From: Girardia tigrina
Taxonomy: Eukaryota
DNA: 64,000 nt
NCBI GenBank assembly: GCA_001938485.1
Contig: MQRK01236447.1
Location: 7,738-71,737, forward strand
Direction: 5' to 3'
Positions within the stretch are counted from its first letter, which is position 1. Every line of letters starts with the position of its first letter. This document shows positions 1-63,668 of the stretch, piece by piece. The translations under genes and the position numbers were made by a program. The notes under the pieces were generated by a model. The model was not told the DNA's origin, did no database searches, and saw only the letters and a list, made by a program, of their open reading frames with translations.

Positions 1-34
<34 letters not shown>
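1..34. repeat. (AT)n microsatellite
   Basis: Pure AT dinucleotide run. Similar runs occur at ~20266-20301, 39072-39218 (spanning a gap), 42809-42840 and 60186-60207. Confidence 0.95.
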
Positions 35-37
<3 letters not shown>

Positions 38-547
38 GTACTATATTTATATAACAATAATATATTAATATTCATGGTTGATATTGTGATCATTCTTCAG
101 TAAATAGTTGATGATACACATAGTGATTGTATATAATATATAATAATAATATTATATATATGTTACATATAATATATGTCTAACATATATATATATTAAA
201 ATGTTCATTTTTTGAAAGGTTGATAAGGTAATGGTTGATACAATTAGGGTTACTTTTTATTGCTGTTAAGGTAGATTTGAAGGTTTTTATATACAAATGG
301 CTGTTCATGAGGTGATTTTGATGGTTGACGATATGGTTGTTAAGGTATATTTGATAGCTGATATGGTACTTTTAATGGTTGATAAAGTATATTTGATAGT
401 TGATATGGTAATTTTTGATGGTTGCTGGTATGTTTGATAAGGTATATTGGATAGTTTATAGTATGATGGTAATGGTTGATAAGGTAGTTTTTATAGTATT
501 TTATATATTATTCAGCATTTTCTGTATTTTTTACATATTCAGTTTTG

Positions 548-2357
548 CATGACGATATCACCTTGGATACGTTCATGTTTTGAATGCTTGATACGATATT
601 GGTTGATAAAATAGTATAATATCATAATATAATACATATCTATAATATAATATTTGTACACATGATGTGCATATATTCGAAAAAGCACTAGGTATCGATT
701 TTTTCAAAAATGTTGATATTGAATGTGACTATTCATATATGAGTTACTATCCATGTGTTCAAACAGATTTTTAATATTTTGCTGTCTTCACCTTCTGCCT
801 AGGGCCTAGGCTATACCTTATGAGAGTTTTCCACCCCTTTGCACTGTAAAACACTACATCCCCTTAATCGATTAGTGTACATTTCTTCAAAAATCTAAGA
901 TCATATTCCGACTATTAATCTATGGATTTCTATACATGTGTTCAAACAGATTTTCGATATCTTACTACCTTCGACATCTGGCTAGCTGGTACATTATATA
1001 GAAAACGTAAATATAGTACACTTTGCCCAATTGTGAACTTATTGATTTTGCATACTTGCACACGTGAAGTATCGATTTGCACATGTGCAGTATTGATTAG
1101 CACATGTACAGACGAGTGCAGTATTGATTTTTTGCACTTTTTGTGTAATTTTGGTGGTTTTTACAAGTTTTCGATGATTTTGAAGGTGCTTTTCATGGTA
1201 AGGGTGATGGTTTCTAAGCTGTTTTCGATTGTTTTTATATATAATATTAAAAGGTTATGTATCATGGTTACGGTAACCAAGGTACTTTAGATGGTTGATA
1301 CCTAGTCTCTGGTACTTAGCTGATTATGCAGATGTTATGTATAATGTCGATGCATGTTTTAAGTACTATAGGAGTTTTATATATGCAGTTTTTATATATA
1401 ATATAAAAGGTTATTTATCTTGGTTACGGTAACCAAGGTACTTGTGATTGTTGATGCCTAGGCTGGGGTACATTAGGCGATTTATGAGGTATTGTTTGAT
1501 TGTAAATAACATACATATATCATAGGGGTTTTATATATATATACAAAAAAAGCACTAGGCACCGATTTTTGAGCACTTTTTTAAGAATTTCAGAAATATT
1601 CGAAAAATGCAATTTATCAGCACTTTTTCGAAAATGTTGATATGGAATCTGAATTAATGTATATGGGTTACTATTCAAGTGCATCAGCATATTTTTGATA
1701 TTCTGCTTTCTTCTGTCTCTAAAATCGATGTGCATTTTGTGTAAATTTGCACATTATGGTAATTATATGGACAATTAATAAATATATGAAATTTCTAATG
1801 GCACATTCAAATAGAGAATCAAAATGTGCATCAAACACATAATATTGATTTTTGACACAGGCACTTAAAAAATTTTATGTATTGATTTTTTACACTTTGC
1901 ACATGTGCAACTTAAAAAGCACTGTGGTAGCACATTAGAAATGTGCGGCACAATGTACAATATCGATTAGCACATCTGGGCACTGTGCAGCCATCGATTA
2001 GCACTTTTTTCTTCGGTTGCTAAGTAAAGGGTAACGGTTGCTATGAATGCGGTAACCGTTACCATGATTACAACAACCTTGAATGACTGTATCCGTTGCT
2101 AATGAAAAAAATCCTTGGTTACCGTTGCCATTGGTTGATAAGTTGGAACCGAAACCATTGCTAAGGAACCGGGAACCAATCAGAAGTGTTTCCAAGGTAC
2201 CGAGGACCAATCGGAACCGTTGCTAGGGTGGTCGGAACCGTTGCTGCCTAGGCTAGGGTGATCGGAACCGTTTCTATGGTAACCGCGACCGTTGCCATGT
2301 CAAGGGGTGACCCCGCTGGGGGGTGTTTGGCCGAATGCCCATTTTCCCCCTACTTCT
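548..2357. mobile_element. Long terminal inverted repeat (~1.8 kb) of a Polinton-like element, copy 1 (terminus at ~2354-2357)
   Basis: 548-690 is a direct match to 7620-7760. 1500-2350 is an inverted, diverged match to 2710-3560. The minus-strand end reads AGAAGTAGGGGGAAAATGGGCATTC versus AGAAGGGGAAAAATGGGCATTC at 2707. 5'-AG termini are typical of Polintons. Confidence 0.75.
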
Positions 2358-2757
2358 GCTCTTCGATGAACGTTATCTCTTCTTGTGTGATTCTGACTGT
2401 TTCATCTCTTGGACAGTAATAGAGCATACTTCTTACGAACGTACGTGATTCAAGTTCTCTATTAAATTTCACGCACCAATATGTAGTTATCCAATCTTGA
2501 AGGAAATTGTAGGATATGTTAACACAACAGATTTATCACCATGTAAATATTTACGAGACCATTTATTTGCCGAATCAATACACACTTGAAAAATCTTCTT
2601 AGTGGTAATCTCTCTTTAGAGTTTGCTCTCTTTATTTGTAAGTTAAACAACTCAAAAGTGTTTTTAGTATATTGTTAATTATGTTTTGCACCTTCATACA
2701 AATCTTAGAAGGGGAAAAATGGGCATTCTCCCCACATGACCCCCCCGGGGGGAGGCC

Positions 2758-2862
2758 GTTGCCATGGCAACGGTCGCGATTACCATAGCAACGGTCACGG
2801 TTACCATAACAACGGTCGAGGTTACCATGGTAACGGTCGCGGTTACCATAGTAACGGTTCCG
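2758..2862. repeat. 21-bp tandem array (5 units) of X-box-like palindromes in the TIR
   Basis: Unit cores are GTTGCCATGGCAAC, GATTACCATAGCAAC, GTTACCATAACAAC, GTTACCATGGTAAC and GTTACCATAGTAAC at 21-bp spacing. Confidence 0.9.
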
Positions 2863-4430
2863 GTTCCCTTGGTGATGGTCCCCATGGTCTTCGTAACCAT
2901 AGCAACGGTAGCCAAGGGACGTTTTTCATTAGCAACCGATACAATGATTCAAGGCGGTTGTAACCATGGTAACGGTTCCCGTATCCACAGCAACCGTAAC
3001 CCCATCACTAAGGACCGTAGAAAGAAGTGCTAATCGATCACTGCACAGTACCCAGAGACGCTAAGGGATATTTTGAAAGTGCTAATCGGTAGTGCACATT
3101 TTGCCGCACATTTCTAATGTGCTAGCACAGGGCTTTTCAAGTTGCACATATGCAAAAGTGTATAAATCAATACATAAAATTTTTTAAAAGTACTAGTGTC
3201 AAAAATCGATATCATGTGTTTGATGCACATTTTGATTCTCTATTCGAATGTGCAATTAGAAATTTCATATATTGATTACTTTTCTCTATAATAAGCATAA
3301 TGTGCAAATTTGCACAAATTTCACTTTGATTTTAAAGGTACAAGGAAGCAGAATATCAAAAAAGTAATGATGCACTTGAATAGTAACCCACACACGTACA
3401 TTAAGATTCAACATCAACATTTTCGAAAAAGTGCTGAAAAATCAATTTTTTCGAAAATTTCTGAAATTCTCAAAAAAGTGCTCAAAAATATATATTTTCG
3501 TATATATCTGAAACCCATATGATATATGTATGTTGTTTTCCATCAAACAATACCTCATGAATCTCCTAATGTACACAAGTATAATCACAATTATCACGGT
3601 TACCGTAACCAAGATACATAATATTTTATTTTACATGTAAAATCTACATGTAAAAACTACTATTGTACTTCAAGCATGCATCAATATAATACATAACATT
3701 TTNNNNNNNNNNNNNNNNNNNNNNNNNNNNNNNNNNNNNNNNNNNNNNNNNNNNNNNNNNNNNNNNNNNNNNNNNNNNNNNNNNNNNNNNNNNNNNNNNN
3801 NNNNNNNNNNNNNNNNNNNNNNNNNNNNNNNNNNNNNNNNNNNNNNNNNNNNNNNNNNNNNNNNTATGTATATTATACAAAAACCTTAGAAACCATCATT
3901 GTTATCTTAAAAACTATGAGAAATGCTTTAAAAATCATGGAAAACATGTAAAAACCGTCAAAATTACACAAAAAGTGCAAACATCAATACTGTACTAAGC
4001 CTAGGCAGGCTGCATAGGCTGCAAATGTGCTTATCAATACTGTACATGTGCAAGTGTATGAACTTATTAATTTCAATAAATAAGTTCACAATTGTAAAAA
4101 GTGCAATGTATTCATGTTTTAATATAATATTGTGTAAAATGGGGCCGAATGCCCACAGTGGTGGAGAATGCCCATAGGGTATATAAGGAGAAACAAGCAA
4201 AATATCAAAAATCTCTCTGAACACATAGATAGAAACCCATAGGTAAATAGTAGGAATATGATCTTAGATTCTTGAAAAAATCAATACATAGTGCTTTTTC
4301 GAACATATGCACATTATGTATGTAAATATTATATTATAGATATGTATTATATTATGATATTATACTATGTTATCAACCAGTATCGTATCAACCATTCAAA
4401 ACATGGCCGTATCCAAGAAGATATCGTCAT

Positions 4431-4520
4431 GCATCCATCATGTTAATGTATTGCATTCATCATGTCAACGTATTGCATCCATGATGTCAACAAATTGTAT
4501 TCATAATGTCAACGTAATGT
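4431..4520. repeat. 22-bp tandem repeat (4 units) at the inner TIR boundary
   Basis: gcatccatcatgttaatgtatt / gcattcatcatgtcaacgtatt / gcatccatgatgtcaacaaatt / gtattcataatgtcaacgtaat. Inverted counterpart at 7572-7620. Confidence 0.8.
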
Positions 4521-4694
4521 ACAGTTGAATATTTTATATCTTATACATTTTTATATTATATATTTTATGTTATATTTTATATGTTATATATAACAAAAGT
4601 TGTTGTTTACAAGTTCATGAATAAAGACAGGTATAAGGCAAGTATGTTCAACAAACATTTATTTACATATGTTCAATATTTACAAGTATATCAT

Positions 4695-7282
4695 TCACAA
4701 ATGATAATATCCATGAGGTAATGTACTTATTTCATCTGGCAAAATATGTCGTTTATCGTCAAACCAGTCAAGGCTTTTCTTTCGCATCATTACTGTGGAG
4801 ACCTGATGTTCTCTTGATTGGATCCTTCGCATTTCAGAAATTATATTAATTTGTTCCCGCAGCACTCTCATATAATCATGGAATCCGATTTGGTTTGCTA
4901 ATGCTGCCGTTGAACTCCCGTTGCCCTCTTTTTGATCTTGCCATCCAAATCAATGGCATACATCTTAGACCGTAGTATCACAAATCTAGAGATGATTTGA
5001 CCATTGACTTCATCCTTAAACTTTCTAAGGACCTTTTTTTTGACGTTGAATAATTTGGGTGGTCCTTTGGATAGTCTAAGGTATCCATATGTTGAGACAT
5101 TTGAAAAAACTCCGCAAACAGATCTTCTGTATGAATCTGATAGACAAAGCTATCAGTATCCATATACATTAGCTGTAAATTGTGGTTGAATTTAGAGACC
5201 ATGATGTCATAGTGGAAGTCGTACATCAAGGTCTTGGATAGATCCAGGATTGACATCCCCACATATGTCGGCTTATTAAACACCAGTGATGTCTTCAGCA
5301 TATGTATACTCACCAGGTTTTCAGTGTATATGATGTTGCTGTGGAAATTTGATTTGGCAATGAGTTTCTTTGCGCGCTTCCAATCACATACCAGCTCGAG
5401 GTTGATTCTGTTCCGGATATTCTCCATCTCTTAAGTGTCACATCCCGAAAGCTCTCAAAGACATCTGTAAGAAGCAGCACATCTTTTTGGAGGTATACAT
5501 CACTATATTCCCCAAGTTTTTTGCATTTGAAAGTTTGCCAGACATTTTGCGCATGTTGATAATCAGCATCACTAATGTCGGTGTCATTAAGCTTGTTGTA
5601 AAATGCTTCTTTTACTGGTAATGCTGTTTCATCCAGCGATCGCCATGATGTTATATAGTCATAGGGGAATACTCCTTTCCTTTTGACCAAATCAAATGTA
5701 TTTGGGAAGAACTTTTTAGTTTCCTTCAGTTCATCTGCTGGAAGGTTCTTAACAAGACTGTCCAGCGATGATGACATGAATCGGAAACTATTGATGAATC
5801 GGAGCTTAATTCTTCCCACATGCTTAGTAAATGTGATGTATTTTTCCTCACTGTTTGGAATAACATCTATGTTCCCTTTGATTTTTCCCAATTCTCTTAC
5901 TATGAAATGGGAGTCATATCCACTAAGATTGTGGAANACAACAGGAATATTTGTAGATGTTTTACATCGCAAATTGCAGCTATTACATGCTGCTCCTCGA
6001 TATTTTCCAGTGAAATGACAATGGTCTTTGACTTTGTAATTTTCCTTTGTGAATGGCTTTTCACACATGTAACATTGCGTTGCCTTGTTCCATTCACATT
6101 TTTCTTGCCATGCCATTATCATGTTGAACTTGTGTTGCTGCAACATGTCTTCAATTGTGTGGGCATAAGTCTCCATACGTTTCATAAAATGTTCCGCTGC
6201 ATCTGGACTTCTGTATAGGAATGGTTCATTGTCAATACCCAATGTATACATACAGTATGATGATAGCTCATGATACTGGTATGCTGTCGTACTGCTAAGT
6301 TGCGGATCAGGATTGCATGTTTGGACTGGGTTTAGAATGGCTTCAAAGTCACAATATATGATAATTGGCACTTTCTGCATCTTTTCATATTTTTTGAATT
6401 CGATATAATCTTCTTTTGGAAATTCCGCTCTGATGCAATGATTGTTATTGCAATAGACCTTGTGCTCCTCCAACTTCATTATAGCTTCAGAACCATTAAA
6501 ATGTGTAAAACATCGTTTACAAATCTCGATACTTCCATGTTGTTTCGATATTTGGCATCTTAGAAGTCGTTCAAAGTTTTTGATCCATATAAAATGCCTC
6601 TTTTCTCCATCATCTAGCAGTAGTAAATCCCTATGGTCTTTCAATTCTTCCTTACATATAAGTAAGGGATAAAATTTTTCATTCTTCAATCCAAAAATAT
6701 TGATTGATACATTGTTGCGGCTTCCAAATTTATTGATGTCTTCCAGGCTCGGTGAGAATTTTATACAGTTGAAGTCATATGGGTACTGCAGATTGTTATA
6801 TATCCATACCAGTGATGCATGCTTCTGATCCTCAACAAATTTTGACAACATTGCATACTTGAAGCACATGTTGTCTTCATTGTGAACATTGATGCATGCC
6901 TTTTTCTTGACTATCCATTCAGGAAGCGGAATGTGGGAGCTGCCCTTCCTTGGGGAGTATTTATGAACATGTATAATCAACTGATTTACAGATGCAAGAG
7001 TCCATCCACTCTCCTTTTCCTTGCTTTCATCGGCTTCCTTCATTATCTTGGCATGTTCTTCCTTGAGCCAGTCCGTAATATCATCAGATTCCAATATTGG
7101 TCTATTTTTGGTCTTAAAGGCTCTATATGATAATTCATCTTTAACATTGGTGAATGTTGCCTACAATTTTAGGTTGACTTTGATGGCTTTGAAATCAACC
7201 ATGTTGTCTTGTAGAATCTCCATGGTTTCCTTCTTGGAATATTCCAGAAACTCATGGAGACTTGTGACTTTGCTGCCTAGGC
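4695..7282 (-). pseudogene. Polinton/adintovirus-type protein-primed family B DNA polymerase (pPolB), with frameshifts, a stop and an internal deletion
   Basis: Motifs: ESGWTL, CINVHNEDNMCFKY and HFIWIKNFERL (N-terminal region); IIYCDFEA (ExoI); CYMCEKPF..DHCHFTGKYRGAACNSCNL (endonuclease VII/HNH-like insert); FHNLSGYDSHF (ExoII); RKGVFPYDY; YMDTDSF (Pol motif C); LRSKMY; DDKRHILPDEISTLPHGYYHL* at the C-terminus. The sequence jumps from DVFESFRDVTLK to MENIRNR, so motifs A and B are missing. Confidence 0.92.
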
Positions 7283-8343
7283 NNNNNNNNNNNNNNNNNN
7301 NNNNNNNNNNNNNNNNNNNNNNNNNNNNNNNNNNNNNNNNNNNNNNNNTTTATGAATTGGTCTCTGTCTTGAGCTTTTTGATGGAATATTTGAGATATTT
7401 GTATCATTTACACGTTTTGATGGAATATTTGAAGCCTTGGCTGCCTGGCCTGCCTTGACTGTATTTGGAACAGGTATCTGCATTGAAAAATTTGTAAAAT
7501 TTACATGTTTTAAAGGAACTTTTACCTTATTTGAGCCATTTTTCTCAATTGAAACATTCTTCTCAATTGCTGATGCAATACGTTGACATGATGAATGCAA
7601 TACATTAACATGATGGATGCATGACGATATCTTCTTGGATACGGCCATGTTTTGAATGGTTGATACGATACTGGTTGATAACATAGTATAATATCATAAT
7701 ATAATACATATCTATAATATAATATTTACATACATAATGTGCATATGTTCGAAAAAGCACTATGTATTGATTTTTTCAAGAATCTAAGATCATATTCCTA
7801 CTATTTACCTATGGGTTTCTATCTATGTGTTCAGAGAGATTTTTGATATTTTGCTTGTTTCTCCTTATATACCCTATGGGCATTCTCCACCACTGTGGGC
7901 ATTCGGCCCCATTTTACACAATATTATATTAAAACATGAATACATTGCACTTTTTACAATTGTGAACTTATTAATTGAAATTAATAAGTTCATACACTTG
8001 CACATGTACAGTATTGATAAGCACATTTGCAGCCTAGGCAGCCTGCCTAGGCTTAGTACAGTATTGATGTTTGCACTTTTTGTGTAATTTTGACGGTTTT
8101 TACATGTTTTCCATGATTTTTAAAGTATTTCTCATAGTTTTTAAGATAACAATGATGGTTTCTAAGGTGTATGTATCATATACATANNNNNNNNNNNNNN
8201 NNNNNNNNNNNNNNNNNNNNNNNNNNNNNNNNNNNNNNNNNNNNNNNNNNNNNNNNNNNNNNNNNNNNNNNNNNNNNNNNNNNNNNNNNNNNNNNNNNNN
8301 NNNNNNNNNNNNNNNNNNNNNNNNNNNNNNNNNNNNNNNNNNN

Positions 8344-8382
8344 ACGCGTTTCGAGATAATAAAAATCCCATCATCAGGTCAC
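8344..8382 (-). ncRNA. Minimal type I hammerhead ribozyme (Penelope-like element type)
   Basis: Minus strand reads GUGAC CUGAUGA U GGGAU-UUUUAUU-AUCUC GAAAC GC GU. This has the catalytic core, a 5-bp stem II and the palindromic ACGCGU mini stem III. The cleavage-site C lies in the gap, but GUC is visible in the copy at 59381. Confidence 0.75.
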
Positions 8383-9039
8383 AAAATGTACCAAGCAGGT
8401 ACACTATATGGAAAGTGAAATAAAGTTATTTTCATCCAAAAATTTATTGGATAAATTTTATTTATTTTCGGCAAGTTTCCATATAGTGTACCTGAAACAG
8501 CAACAACAGCGCATAATGAAATTTTAACGAAGCGCATAATCTGCTCTAAGTTAACAAATAACAATGCCACAAGTTAATAAAACACAACAAACAGATGCAC
8601 CAAGTCCACACATAGACATAACATTGCCATAAGTTTCGTAGTACACAGTAAACATAATAATAGATGAGAAGGTATCGAGTTATAGTTTAGGAAAAATATC
8701 ATCCCCGAGCGACACTTTGCTAGGTGGGGGGCCCTTAGCTCATCCTGTCTATATCCGAACCCGATGGCCCTTCAGACTCGGCACTGTCAGGCAGATGTCG
8801 AGCAAGAAGAGGCGTCCGACCCTATAATGTATAGTAGAGAGAATAAGTATGGTAAAGAGTTGTAGTTAAATAACAAATTGAGATTGGGTTGTGGCTGACC
8901 CTTAATAGCCACTGGGGGCTCTGAGCACTTAAAATCGTTATGAACAAAAGGGTCGTGACAAATGCAACAACGAACGGCCCATCTTCCTTTTCAATATCGT
9001 CTAATTCTTTATAATGTTGGGGTTTCGAGAGATGCATAT

Positions 9040-10671
9040 GAACACTTTTGACAAAATTTTATGTAGAAAAAATTTTAAAATAATTATTTTGGTAAAATTA
9101 ATAATTTCAAACAAAATAATATTTAGTTTAACAAATTTGGAATTGAAAATTAAAAATATTTTAGTCTTTGTTTTATTTTATTAATTTTCAAGGCTGATGA
9201 AAACCGCTATATAAACAGCAGCAAATTTAGTTTAGTTTGCCCAAAAATTCAATTAACAAGAAAACAAAAAGAAAGGAGTCAAGTGAATTTATTATAAAAA
9301 TTTATTTTTACTTATTATTCTTTAAAACATTTTTTTATAAAACCAATAGTATCCCGTATGGGACAAAAGGGTTTTTATTAAAAAATTAAACTATCGTTCG
9401 TTTTGAGATTCACAGTTTTTACTGTAATCTGTTAACTCGTACGAAATATTTATTTGTGTTTGTGTCCTGTCATCAAGAATTGAATTATTATTATTATTTT
9501 TGACGTGTTTATTAAGAACATTTAAACAAGTCTCGTTTGAATCTTTATTGCAATTACATTTAGAGTCATTAAAACTCTCAGAAGGTCTTTCATCGTTTGC
9601 CATCGTTCTAATTGGTTTTCTTATTTCTGTTTTTAATCACGATTATTCGAACAATTTTTCTAAGTTATTTTTTAAAATATTTAACCTCTAAAAAATATTA
9701 ATTAAAAATATTAATTTTTACCATTTTTCAATAAATGCCCAAATAATAAAAATGACATCAAATTATTAAAAATGCATTTAATTTAAATTTTACTAAAAAT
9801 TATTAAACTTAATTTTAATTGTGAAATAAGATATGAACTTATAAAATGATTATTTTAATTATGTTCGAATAGTTAATCACTTTAAATTTAATAAAAAATA
9901 CCAATTTCCATCTGGGTGGGAGAATCACCATTCTAAATTCAACATACTTAAATCAAAATGCAACATCCATACATTTACACATTCAATTATTTATATGAAT
10001 CTTGTTCTTGATCAACGACTTGCCTTTTCTAAGAATTTCAAATATTTCCTTAAGTTTGATGAAGTTTTTATTGTCAAACAATCTCTTAATTTCAGCCATT
10101 GTCACTTGTAAAACCTGGTTTTGTGATCCACTGCAAGAATGACCTTCAATTGTTTTGAATGAAACAACATCATCACTCGAATTTAAAAACAACAAATAAG
10201 CACGAACCGAACACTGAACGTCTCTATACGTTGGGTTCTTACATCTGAAATATCTTTTTTCTACTGCCAAAGTTTGATTTGAAAACCATTAACCAAAATT
10301 TTTTCAAAAAATCAAAATCATTTATCGAAAAATTAACTCATCAAACTTTAGATAAAATATTAAATGAGTCAAATAGTAATAATAAAAATCTTAATAATAC
10401 GATTCATCAAACCATTTCCCTAATACAAATTATAATCCACTTGAATCAAGGTATATCTTATCGATTCCTTCTTCAGAGGGTTTTAAACATTTAAAATTAT
10501 CAATTTTGAAAAGTGTGATCCCAAATACCATGAATCTAAAAATTATTTCCCAATCATATTAAATTCGTGATATGTTCAGTAATAAATCTCCCACTCCTCT
10601 CGGTTTGTGTTTCCGATTTCCGAGACTAAATTTTCCGCGATTTAATTTTTGAGACTTAAAAGTCGTGCTCC
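9040..10671 (-). mobile_element. Degenerate DNA transposon, MULE-like, with a WRKY/FLYWCH-like zinc-finger remnant
   Basis: ORF 9983-10270 reads RYFRCKNPTYRDVQCSVRAYLL...HSC. Subterminal short repeats at 10600-10670. The ~450-bp part 9505-9985 recurs at 28235-28705 (+) and ~44985-45395 (-). Confidence 0.45.
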
Positions 10672-12299
10672 GGCTTGACACGCATATTTCAACACGACCT
10701 ATTTCGCTCTTTTAAACGTTAATTAAGGTTTTGTACTAATAGGATTAAATAGTAAAGGTTATTATATAATTATATAATTATAAATTACTAGATTAAGAAT
10801 TATTATCAAAATTAAAAACAAGTCAATGCTTCAAAATTTATTAAAACCACAACAGCTTAAATTTGTTACTTAAACTAATTTTCATTTTTATTTTTTACAT
10901 CAAAATAATAATTTTATTATAATATTATTATTCAAATAACCAATAATAACTAAAATAGAATTTTTAATTAAATACTGAAATTCTAGAATTATTTAATCAT
11001 GAAATATTTTTCTTAATAATCAAAAGCTATTTTTACTTAAAAATAATTAAAAATATTATTCATTTAAATACTTAAATTGCTGAGCATTTACTAAAAATAC
11101 TAAAAAAATAATTAAACTACTAATAAATTGAATTAAAAATACTGAGTATTTACTAAATTTACTGATGAATTAATTATACTTCATTTAAATACAAATGCAA
11201 TTTAATCAAGACCCATAGATTCTTTATAATTATTTCCGACCCATAATTGACTAATATAATCGCAAAGATATATTAATCCAGAGAAATATCAATTAGTGAA
11301 TGCAATGTTGAGAATTGTTGCAAATGCCATTGTAACATTAAATATCTAAAAAACCAAATTTGTGTACTTCATACTTATCAATTGGTACCAAATTGACTTA
11401 TGTAATAAAATTCTGTTGTGTAATAGTTATACGAATAAACTAAATCTTTTTCCATTCTTGTTATTAGCTTGCTTTAAATATATTTATATCCATCGAAATT
11501 AAAACTTATTTGGAGGCCCTTTACTCAATCAATTTTCTCCAAACCTTGCACACTTACTCCTTTTCGAGACAATAAATGATTATGTGAAAATTTGATCTAC
11601 AAAAACTTTTTAAGGTCTCGAAATTGGAACAAAACGGTCCTAACGGAGTTCCTGAACAATATTAGCATAAAAAGATCTACCTATAAATTATAAGTAGTTT
11701 ATATAATCTCTTTACTAATATTACCCAAAATAAATTGAAAATAAATAAAGCCCTGTACACGAATTTAAAGTCTATTTAGTAAATCAAAAAAATATTTGAT
11801 TATATCCATGCTTTATGCGGGCTGAAATCGGCTTTTGATTTTTTTAATTTTTTATTGTTTTTTGAAAATAATTTTTTAATTAAAATTTTGTTGTCAAAGT
11901 AGACTTCTGTCTGAATAAATTTTGGACATTTTTTTAATTTACCAGTTTCTTTCTTTCTTATTAGCTTTAACCATTCAATTTCCGGGCCCCCTGTACAAGG
12001 GAAACAAAGATATGACCAACATTTTTATGTTTTACACAGAAAAAAGATTTTCTTTAGTTATATGTAAATGGTCATTAAACTTCCTGAGAAAAAATACCGT
12101 CAGTGAATTCGATTCCATGATTTAAATATAGAAATCTAATTTTTGTCCCAAAATGAGAAATTAAAATCCATATATATATAATTCTTATTTTCATAAAACT
12201 AATATATATATATATATTATATTCGAACTAAATTAAAATTTTGTTTAAATTTATAAAAAATATTTTCGCACCGTTTAAAATAGCACCAATTCGTTCGTG

Positions 12300-63668
<51,369 letters not shown>

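What the first reader, a model, noticed from the sequence alone, without database searches (positions are those of the whole stretch)
2707..8186. Single-gene TIR-pPolB-TIR element with ~1.8-kb TIRs and no integrase, ATPase or capsid
Seen: near-identical inverted arms (inner boundaries 4479 and 7572) enclose only ~3.1 kb, almost all of it one Polinton-type pPolB reading region plus a 66-N gap. The left arm runs 2707-4479 and begins with AG. Established: canonical Polintons/Mavericks are 15-20 kb with pPolB, integrase, packaging ATPase, protease and capsids. Linear invertron plasmids and segmented bidnaviruses also pair pPolB with TIRs. Inference: this is a polymerase-only replicon, one segment of a multipartite Polinton-like system, or a deletion derivative. 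The gene fills the inter-TIR space cleanly and its C-terminus ends ~215 bp from the TIR, which favours a real architecture.
Basis: partly seen in the sequence, partly recalled or inferred. Interest (0 to 1): 0.82.

Follow-up and report, generated by a model that had tools for sequence, protein, structure and literature searches.

The report
Decayed Polinton remnant: polymerase pseudogene between repeats
This is most likely the dead, internally deleted remnant of an ordinary Polinton/Maverick virus-like transposon in an animal (probably arthropod) genome: a broken polymerase gene next to one complete long terminal repeat and a partly assembled second one, not a new polymerase-only replicon.

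Summary
The core observation is real but smaller than claimed. The near-identical inverted repeat is 615 bp (3865-4479 vs 7572-8186; 6 mismatches), not about 1.8 kb. Both outer ends stop exactly at assembly gaps, and nothing after the right gap matches the outer kilobase of the left arm. The 1.8-kb arm is still a real module. A third, diverged inverted copy (546-2354) matches the left arm from its AG terminus almost to its inner boundary. Only one terminus of the element (2707) is in the window, so no target-site duplication can be read.

The enclosed gene is a phi29-like, protein-primed family B polymerase, but a pseudogene. It has three frame changes, one in-frame stop and one internal loss of about 230 codons. 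Its relatives in 80 metagenome contigs are 1100-1390 aa. In the longer contigs they sit in multi-gene arrays with an rve integrase directly downstream and an A32-type ATPase, the canonical Polinton set. None of those genes is detectable elsewhere in the 64-kb window.

Best reading: a deleted, non-autonomous Polinton/Maverick remnant. A scaffolding artefact is the main rival. A true polymerase-only lineage is not excluded, but nothing here supports it. Interest is low.

The parts
2707..4479 (+). Left arm (terminal inverted repeat) of the element, 1773 bp as written, including the assembly gap at 3703-3864. It starts 5'-AG.
   Evidence: The inner 615 bp is 99.0% identical to the reverse complement of 7572-8186. 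The whole arm is collinear at 76-85% with the inverted copy at 546-2354. Similarity to that copy begins exactly at the AG terminus.
2707..2728 (+). Terminal 22-mer, AGAAGGGGAAAAATGGGCATTC. It is the only terminus of this element in the window.
   Evidence: The degenerate 22-mer occurs twice in the window, here and at 2333-2354 (-). None is expected by chance.
2758..2865 (+). Subterminal array of a 21-bp repeat (5 copies). A related array lies in the neighbouring arm at 2014-2060. It is a candidate protein-binding array (inferred).
   Evidence: Tandem Repeats Finder and the raw sequence.
4480..4694 (.). AT-rich non-coding spacer between the arm and the polymerase stop codon. It holds 22-bp and 7-bp tandem repeats. 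Under the deletion reading, the junction would lie here.
   Evidence: Neighbour-gene proteins of relatives give no tblastn hit outside the polymerase.
4695..7268 (-). [quoted passage not shown] It has three frame changes, one of them together with an internal loss of about 230 codons, plus one in-frame stop and one unread base. The C-terminus is complete. The N-terminal 95-270 residues of relatives are unmatched.
   Evidence: tblastn outer bounds and counts with 10 database relatives and 24 metagenome relatives. 1382 relatives were found with the longest open piece. Some relatives match PF03175, and this copy and its relatives match an Endonuclease_7-like zinc motif. The model of relative P0003 matches phi29 DNA polymerase best.
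7283..7348 (.). Assembly gap of 66 N. Continuity across it is untested.
   Evidence: No collinear homology on either side.
7349..7571 (.). 223 bp of unique sequence joined to the inner end of the right arm. Together with that arm it forms an 838-bp contig lying between two gaps.
   Evidence: No similarity to relatives' loci.
7572..8186 (-). Right arm. Only the inner 615 bp is present, and it ends at the gap 8187-8343.
   Evidence: 99.0% identical to 3865-4479 in inverted orientation, with 6 mismatches. Sequence from 8344 onward does not continue the arm.
546..2354 (-). Neighbour: a third, diverged copy of the same arm (1809 bp) in inverted orientation, ending ...CT at 2354. It is the right end of another element or a solo arm. 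It faces the element across a 352-bp spacer (2355-2706).
   Evidence: Collinear blastn matches at 67-85%, the terminus alignment and the inner-boundary alignment. Sequence left of 546 is simple and tandem repeats with no polymerase homology.

Best explanation
This is a dead remnant of a Polinton/Maverick-type virus-like transposon in an animal, probably arthropod, genome.

**The parent element (from established knowledge of the family).** It carried about 1.8-kb terminal inverted repeats with 5'-AG ends. It copied itself by protein-primed DNA synthesis and was inserted by an rve-type integrase.

**This copy.** It keeps one complete arm, a polymerase pseudogene and, as assembled, the inner 615 bp of the second arm. 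Everything that lies behind the polymerase in relatives (integrase, packaging ATPase, capsid and fibre genes) is gone. The loss is most simply one internal deletion running from just after the polymerase stop to the inner edge of the far arm. The polymerase has since decayed, or had already decayed. The copy cannot replicate or move by itself.

**Shown here.** The identity of the polymerase and its breaks, the three arm copies, one terminus, and the absence of other element genes in the window.

**Inferred.** The gene set of the parent, the single-deletion route, and the non-autonomy.
For: **Polymerase identity**
- 1382 relatives in arthropods and corals, at 37-52% identity.
- Pfam PF03175 is on record for some relatives.
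- A model of relative P0003 (pLDDT 71) matches phi29 DNA polymerase at E 5e-15 and TM 0.54-0.58. Primer-dependent family B polymerases score E 8e-7 or worse.

**Brokenness**
- There are three frame changes, an in-frame stop and one internal loss. The loss is about 230 residues against database relatives and 217-275 against 24 metagenome relatives.
- The C-terminus is complete.

**Relatives are multi-gene elements**
- Their polymerases are 1100-1390 aa, in dense gene arrays.
- An rve integrase lies directly behind the polymerase, and a Pox_A32 ATPase is present.
- 13 of 27 relatives with at least 1.5 kb downstream have that integrase.
- 17 of 18 relatives with at least 800 bp on both sides have no inverted repeat around the polymerase.

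**The arm is a discrete module**
- Its terminus and inner boundary are shared by a 76-85% identical third copy.

**Precedent in the literature**
- Insect Polintons with about 2-kb terminal repeats, and derivatives that have lost genes (10.1101/2025.02.07.637071).
- Hessian fly Maverick copies fragmented by deletions, carrying only the polymerase or only the integrase domain (PMC8504770).
Against: - The two arms differ by only 1% while the gene carries several breaks. This fits damage that predates the insertion, which would mean a derivative copied after its deletion. It equally fits draft-assembly errors.
- No full-length parent element, no second copy of this derivative and no right terminus or target-site duplication could be examined.
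- The relatives whose context was seen are only 31-46% identical and come from metagenomes of unknown host. The gene order of the true parent is therefore inferred.
Confidence: 0.6

Rival explanations
1. The inverted arrangement is a scaffolding artefact. The 838-bp contig 7349-8186 carries the inner end of an arm plus 223 bp. It belongs to the far end of this element or to another copy of the family, and repeat-confused read pairs placed it here. Alternatively, one of the gaps is much longer than written. What is really present would be one arm plus a polymerase remnant, or a longer element.
For: - The right arm is a small contig lying between two gaps.
- Both arm copies break at the same repeat position, where the third copy has a 156-bp tandem duplication.
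- Sequence after the right gap does not continue the arm, although 1158 bp more would be needed and only 157 N are written.
- No homology links the two sides of the 7283-7348 gap.
- 5 of the 6 arm mismatches are transversions, which is unusual for real divergence. The number is small.
Against: - Gap sizes of 66, 157 and 162 look like read-pair estimates rather than placeholders, which implies that real links exist.
- The right contig has its own junction between the arm's inner end and unique sequence, so a second arm copy does exist somewhere in the genome.
- No other element genes lie anywhere in the next 55 kb.
Confidence: 0.22
2. A genuine minimal lineage: a repeat-polymerase-repeat element that is either propagated as a polymerase-only replicon or is one segment or satellite of a multipartite Polinton-like system. 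This copy would be a recently inactivated member.
For: - The arms are 99% identical, so the insertion is recent.
- The polymerase homology, with a complete C-terminus, fills the interior.
- The longest open piece is 594 codons in a genome of about 30% G+C, which argues against long decay.
- One relative, L026, has a decayed polymerase bracketed by a short, diverged inverted repeat.
Against: - The only copy seen is non-functional and lacks about 230 codons that all full-length relatives have.
- Relatives with enough flank are multi-gene elements, and 17 of 18 lack any bracketing inverted repeat.
- The second terminus is unseen.
- A polymerase alone gives no route to integration, yet this copy sits in a chromosome between host-like and transposon sequence.
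Confidence: 0.12
3. An endogenous piece of a bidnavirus-like virus, or an integrated linear invertron plasmid. Both kinds pair a protein-primed polymerase with terminal inverted repeats.
For: Both kinds combine this type of polymerase with terminal repeats. The bidnavirus polymerase is itself derived from insect Polintons (PMC4061559).
Against: - The interior has no room for, and shows no trace of, the parvovirus-type helicase and capsid genes of a bidnavirus segment, or the RNA polymerase usual in linear plasmids.
- The relatives' neighbours are an rve integrase and an A32 ATPase, which is the Polinton set.
- The 5'-AG terminus fits Polintons.
- No direct comparison with a bidnavirus was run, because fetching an animal virus is barred.
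Confidence: 0.03

Closest known systems
Polinton/Maverick elements (polintoviruses, adintovirus-like) of insects and other invertebrates
   Same: - Protein-primed family B polymerase with a zinc-binding, Endonuclease VII-like insert.
- Long terminal inverted repeat. About 2 kb is documented in butterflies (10.1101/2025.02.07.637071).
- 5'-AG terminus.
- Relatives of the polymerase sit beside an rve integrase and an A32-type ATPase.
   Different: This copy has no integrase, ATPase, protease or capsid genes. It spans about 5.5 kb as written, against 15-25 kb for canonical elements (PMC6431247). Its polymerase is broken, and only one terminus is visible.
Fragmented or deleted Maverick copies in insect genomes (for example Mayetiola destructor) and gene-loss derivatives of butterfly Polintons
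   Same: [quoted passage not shown] Derivatives that keep their terminal repeats after losing genes (10.1101/2025.02.07.637071).
   Different: The butterfly derivatives described lost the polymerase and kept the rest. Here the polymerase is what remains. As assembled, it lies between the inner ends of both arms rather than as a one-ended fragment.
Bidnaviridae genome segments and linear invertron plasmids
   Same: A protein-primed polymerase plus terminal inverted repeats on a molecule of 5-7 kb.
   Different: Those are free linear molecules with further genes (helicase and capsid, or an RNA polymerase). This is a chromosomal copy with a pseudogene, and its relatives carry Polinton-type neighbours. 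Not compared directly.
phi29 DNA polymerase (PDB 1xhx, 2ex3, 2pyj)
   Same: The best structural match of the modelled relative P0003, at E 5e-15 and TM 0.54-0.58. It shares the exonuclease plus polymerase fold of protein-primed enzymes.
   Different: Sequence identity is 12-13%. The element's enzyme is about twice as long, with an N-terminal extension and a zinc-motif insert. Sequence searches of the PDB did not find it.

Membership tests
Polinton/Maverick (autonomous element) | [quoted passage not shown] | tested here: met
   Present but broken. Relatives and Pfam PF03175 in some relatives. The fold of a relative matches phi29 polymerase. A YxDTDS-type motif is seen in one open piece.
Polinton/Maverick (autonomous element) | Retroviral-type (rve, DDE) integrase | tested here: not met
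   No open frame of 110 aa or more other than the polymerase lies near the element. 388 proteins from relatives' loci, integrases included, gave 0 tblastn hits outside 4480-7571.
Polinton/Maverick (autonomous element) | [quoted passage not shown] | tested here: not met
   Same tests. Sensitivity is limited for fast-evolving capsid genes.
Polinton/Maverick (autonomous element) | Terminal inverted repeats at both ends | tested here: inconclusive
   The left arm is complete. Of the right arm only the inner 615 bp is present and it ends in a gap. Nothing after the gap continues it.
Polinton/Maverick (autonomous element) | 5'-AG...CT-3' termini and a 6-bp target-site duplication (Kapitonov and Jurka 2006, from my own knowledge) | tested here: inconclusive
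   AG lies at 2707, and the neighbouring arm ends CT at 2354. The right terminus is absent from the window, so the duplication of aatctt cannot be checked.
Polinton/Maverick-derived non-autonomous or decayed copy | Retains family-type terminal repeat(s) and part of the gene set, with the rest deleted, and has relatives that are full elements | tested here: met
   Arm plus polymerase pseudogene. Relatives sit in arrays with an integrase and an ATPase. A full-length parent in the same genome could not be looked for.
Bidnaviridae-like endogenous element | Parvovirus-type SF3 helicase and jelly-roll capsid genes beside the polymerase | tested here: not met
   There is no room and no further open frames between the arms. 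No direct comparison with the virus was made (barred).
Linear invertron plasmid | Free linear molecule with terminal protein, usually with an RNA polymerase gene | not testable with these tools
   The sequence is embedded in a 64-kb scaffold that also holds a reverse-transcriptase fragment and a host-like exon. Free ends would need read data.

The most novel reading that the evidence does not exclude
The repeat-polymerase-repeat unit is a real, recurrent architecture in this host. It would be a minimal Polinton derivative that keeps only the replication gene and about 1.8-kb arms, and that was copied after the loss of all other genes with the help of full elements. It would be the mirror image of the polymerase-lacking derivatives described in butterflies.
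Probability: 0.12. Interest if true: 0.6.

Novelty: new member of a known kind. Interest (0 to 1): 0.22.

Why it matters
**As it stands.** This is an ordinary piece of transposon decay in a draft assembly. Its main value is as a caution:
- Only a third of the claimed inverted repeat is verifiable.
- The end of the finding is a gap edge.
- The gene is a pseudogene.

**Minor points of use.**
- It documents a Polinton family with about 1.8-kb, internally repetitive, non-coding arms and a well-defined 22-nt AG terminus.
- It shows that this arthropod and coral polymerase clade lies in multi-gene arrays in environmental contigs, beside an rve integrase in about half of those with enough flank and, in some, an A32 ATPase.

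**If polymerase-only copies proved recurrent in the source genome.** They would show that Polinton derivatives can persist with the replication gene alone, which bears on how bidnaviruses and linear plasmids acquired such polymerases.

Tried and rejected

The genomic context of the closest relatives, which are arthropod proteins at 44-52% identity, could therefore not be read.
- Pfam on the separate open pieces of the polymerase gave only an Endonuclease_7-like zinc motif.
- Sequence searches of the PDB, with the longest piece and with two profiles, gave only zinc-finger noise. The fold search was needed to get a named polymerase hit.
- Rfam found nothing in the window.

**Searches that came back empty**
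- Search for the missing right terminus, using the terminal 22-mer with up to 3 mismatches.
- Sensitive blastn of the outer arm against 8344-14145.
- Search for the arms or the non-polymerase interior in the 80 relatives' loci. This gave one trivial 33-bp match.
- Search for remnants of integrase, ATPase, capsid or fibre genes in the window, using 388 proteins from relatives' loci.
- Test for coding continuity across the 7283-7348 gap. It gave only weak, non-collinear matches.

**Readings considered and rejected**
- The three arms as a tandem array of like units. Rejected because the sequence left of 546 is unrelated to the element's interior.
- A snap-back defective genome. Rejected because the inverted repeat stops at the natural inner boundary of the arm and does not include polymerase sequence.

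**Not run on purpose**
- A scan of the viral contig collection, and any fetch of a bidnavirus or adintovirus comparator. Both could fetch a virus of animals.
- The large all-protein representative search. Relatives were already plentiful.
- No gap was filled.


Full report
**Nature of the window.** The window has about 30% G+C and twelve runs of N. It holds a reverse-transcriptase fragment and a host-like exon. The polymerase's closest relatives are from arthropods and corals. I take it for a draft scaffold of an animal genome, probably an arthropod. Nothing suggests human sequence.

**Observation: the inverted repeat.**
- The repeat finder reports arms 3708-4479 and 7572-8343, but their outer 157-162 positions are N paired with N.
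- A self-blast gives the true repeat: 3865-4479 against 8186-7572. It is 615 bp with 6 mismatches and no indels. This cannot be chance.
- Both outer ends coincide exactly with gap edges.
- After the right gap (8344 onward) there is no significant similarity to 2355-3702, even with 7-base words.
- The 22-nt terminal sequence occurs only at 2707-2728 (+) and 2333-2354 (-).
- So the '1.8-kb TIR pair' is not shown. One complete arm and the inner third of a second are shown. The finding's right end, 8186, is a gap edge.

**The arm is nevertheless a real module.**
- A third copy lies inverted at 546-2354 and is 67-85% identical. It is collinear with 2707-4433.
- Aligned, the two termini become similar exactly at AG(A/T)AGGGG.AAAATGGGCATTC. 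The flanks are unrelated.
- At the inner end, the two near-identical arms part at 4479/7572. The third copy parts 46 bp earlier, where a 22-bp tandem repeat begins.
- The arm carries a 21-bp subterminal array with 5 copies.
- It has no detectable coding content.
- The third copy ends ...CT at 2354 and faces the element across 352 bp. It is therefore the right end of another element or a solo arm. Sequence left of it is simple repeats.

**Gaps, tested first.**
- 3703-3864: both flanks are collinear with the third copy, which has a 156-bp tandem duplication just there. This supports order and orientation, and explains why both arms broke at the same point in assembly.
- 7283-7348: polymerase homology stops before the gap. 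Relaxed searches found only weak, non-collinear matches beyond it. The open frame through the N run reflects only its length of 66.
- 8187-8343: the arm does not resume.
- No gap was filled.

**The gene.**
- The longest open piece, 594 codons, finds 1382 relatives at 37-52% identity. They include proteins of mayfly, kissing bug, planthopper, aphid, spiders and Porites corals. Some are on record with Pfam PF03175, and many with an Endonuclease_7-like zinc motif.
- A model of relative P0003 (pLDDT 71, pTM 0.68) matches phi29 DNA polymerase best, at E 5e-15 and TM 0.54-0.58. Primer-dependent family B enzymes are far behind.
- tblastn of 10 database relatives and 24 long metagenome relatives against the window agrees on the following:
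  - Homology lies only on the minus strand, with outer bounds 4698-7268.
  - It runs in three reading frames, so there are three frame changes.
  - One frame change goes with an internal loss. The loss is about 230 residues against database relatives and 217-275 against metagenome relatives.
  - There is one in-frame stop and one unread base.
  - The C-terminus is complete to within a few residues.
  - The N-terminal 95-270 residues of relatives are unmatched.
- A conserved stretch that every full-length relative has is therefore missing. The gene could not give an active enzyme even if its frames were open.

**Relatives' context.**
- I used the single metagenome scan with an alignment of natural relatives. 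It found 542 relatives and kept 80 contigs.
- I only read and counted these contigs. They are uncultured, of unknown host, and some look like virus-like genomes. I record this here in case the operators count that scan under the bar on fetching.
- Polymerases in these contigs are 1100-1390 aa. In long contigs they sit in dense gene arrays.
- An rve integrase lies convergent directly behind the polymerase, and a Pox_A32 ATPase follows.
- 13 of 27 contigs with at least 1.5 kb downstream have that integrase.
- Others carry fibre-like genes (C1q, F5/8 type C, Peptidase_S74) or a glycosyltransferase.
- In the majority of the contigs of about 8 kb or more (11 of 17), the polymerase starts within about 1.5 kb of a contig end and reads inward.
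- Of 18 contigs with at least 800 bp on both sides, 17 have no inverted repeat around the polymerase. The exception, L026, has a short diverged one around a decayed gene.
- None of 388 proteins from these loci hits the window outside the polymerase.

**Interpretation.**
- The polymerase belongs to a Polinton/Maverick-type clade whose members are multi-gene elements.
- In relatives the polymerase is commonly the end gene, with the integrase abutting its stop. One internal deletion, from just behind the stop to the inner edge of the far arm, would therefore leave exactly arm-polymerase-arm. The clean fit is thus no argument for a designed single-gene architecture.
- Insect Polintons with about 2-kb terminal repeats and gene-loss derivatives are described (10.1101/2025.02.07.637071).
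- Maverick copies reduced to the polymerase or the integrase domain are common in the Hessian fly (PMC8504770).
- Canonical features are summarised in PMC6431247.
- The bidnavirus polymerase derives from insect Polintons (PMC4061559). Nothing else bidnavirus-like is present here.
- I put 0.6 on the deleted, decayed remnant, 0.22 on a scaffolding artefact or hidden sequence, 0.12 on a true polymerase-only lineage, and 0.03 on a bidnavirus-like or plasmid origin.

- Pieces of the broken gene were searched apart, each in its own frame. Scripts printed only counts and outer bounds.
- One possible slip: notebook entry 1 copies the coordinates of the separate open pieces as the ORF listing printed them. 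These coordinates bracket frame changes.

Noticed in passing
window 546-2354: A third, diverged (67-85%) inverted copy of the 1.8-kb arm, ending ...CT at 2354. It faces the element's AG terminus across only 352 bp. It is the right end of another element or a solo arm, and sequence left of it is simple or tandem repeats.
   Followed up: yes
window 1231-1538, and the gaps at 3703-3864 and 8187-8343: The diverged arm has a 156-bp tandem duplication exactly where both near-identical arms break into assembly gaps of 162 and 157 N. The gaps probably mark a repeat that the assembler could not resolve.
   Followed up: partly
window 3865-4479 vs 7572-8186: Five of the six mismatches between the arms are transversions. 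This is unusual for real divergence and may reflect draft-sequence errors. The number is too small to test.
   Followed up: no
window 8396-8494: A 99-nt imperfect palindrome immediately after the right gap, possibly a small foldback or MITE-like repeat.
   Followed up: no
window 56068-56400: An open frame matching reverse transcriptase (RVT_1, E 4e-14). It is a retroelement fragment.
   Followed up: no
window 29730-30134: An open frame next to a gap with weak matches to PRMT_C and the proteasome subunit 7 OB domain. It is probably host exon sequence.
   Followed up: no
window 1-53, 20266-20304, 39071-39235: (AT)n-like simple repeats recur, the last set flanking the gap at 39121-39170.
   Followed up: no
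L026:924-1153 and 6210-6484: A metagenome contig with a decayed relative of the polymerase bracketed by a short, diverged (71-88%) inverted repeat. It is the only one of 18 informative relatives with any such repeat.
   Followed up: partly
L016:3783-4934, L018:3266-4327, L050:3147-4271, L053:6655-7521, L021:5354-6376: Relatives without an adjacent integrase carry fibre-like genes (C1q, F5/8 type C, Peptidase_S74 chaperone) or a GT4 glycosyltransferase directly behind the polymerase.
   Followed up: partly
polymerase of the window and its relatives (for example P0003, P0005, L008:2-3916): An Endonuclease VII-like zinc motif sits between exonuclease motifs. Some relatives also have an N-terminal C2H2 finger or a Rho_N/SAP-like domain. 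Their function is unknown.
   Followed up: no
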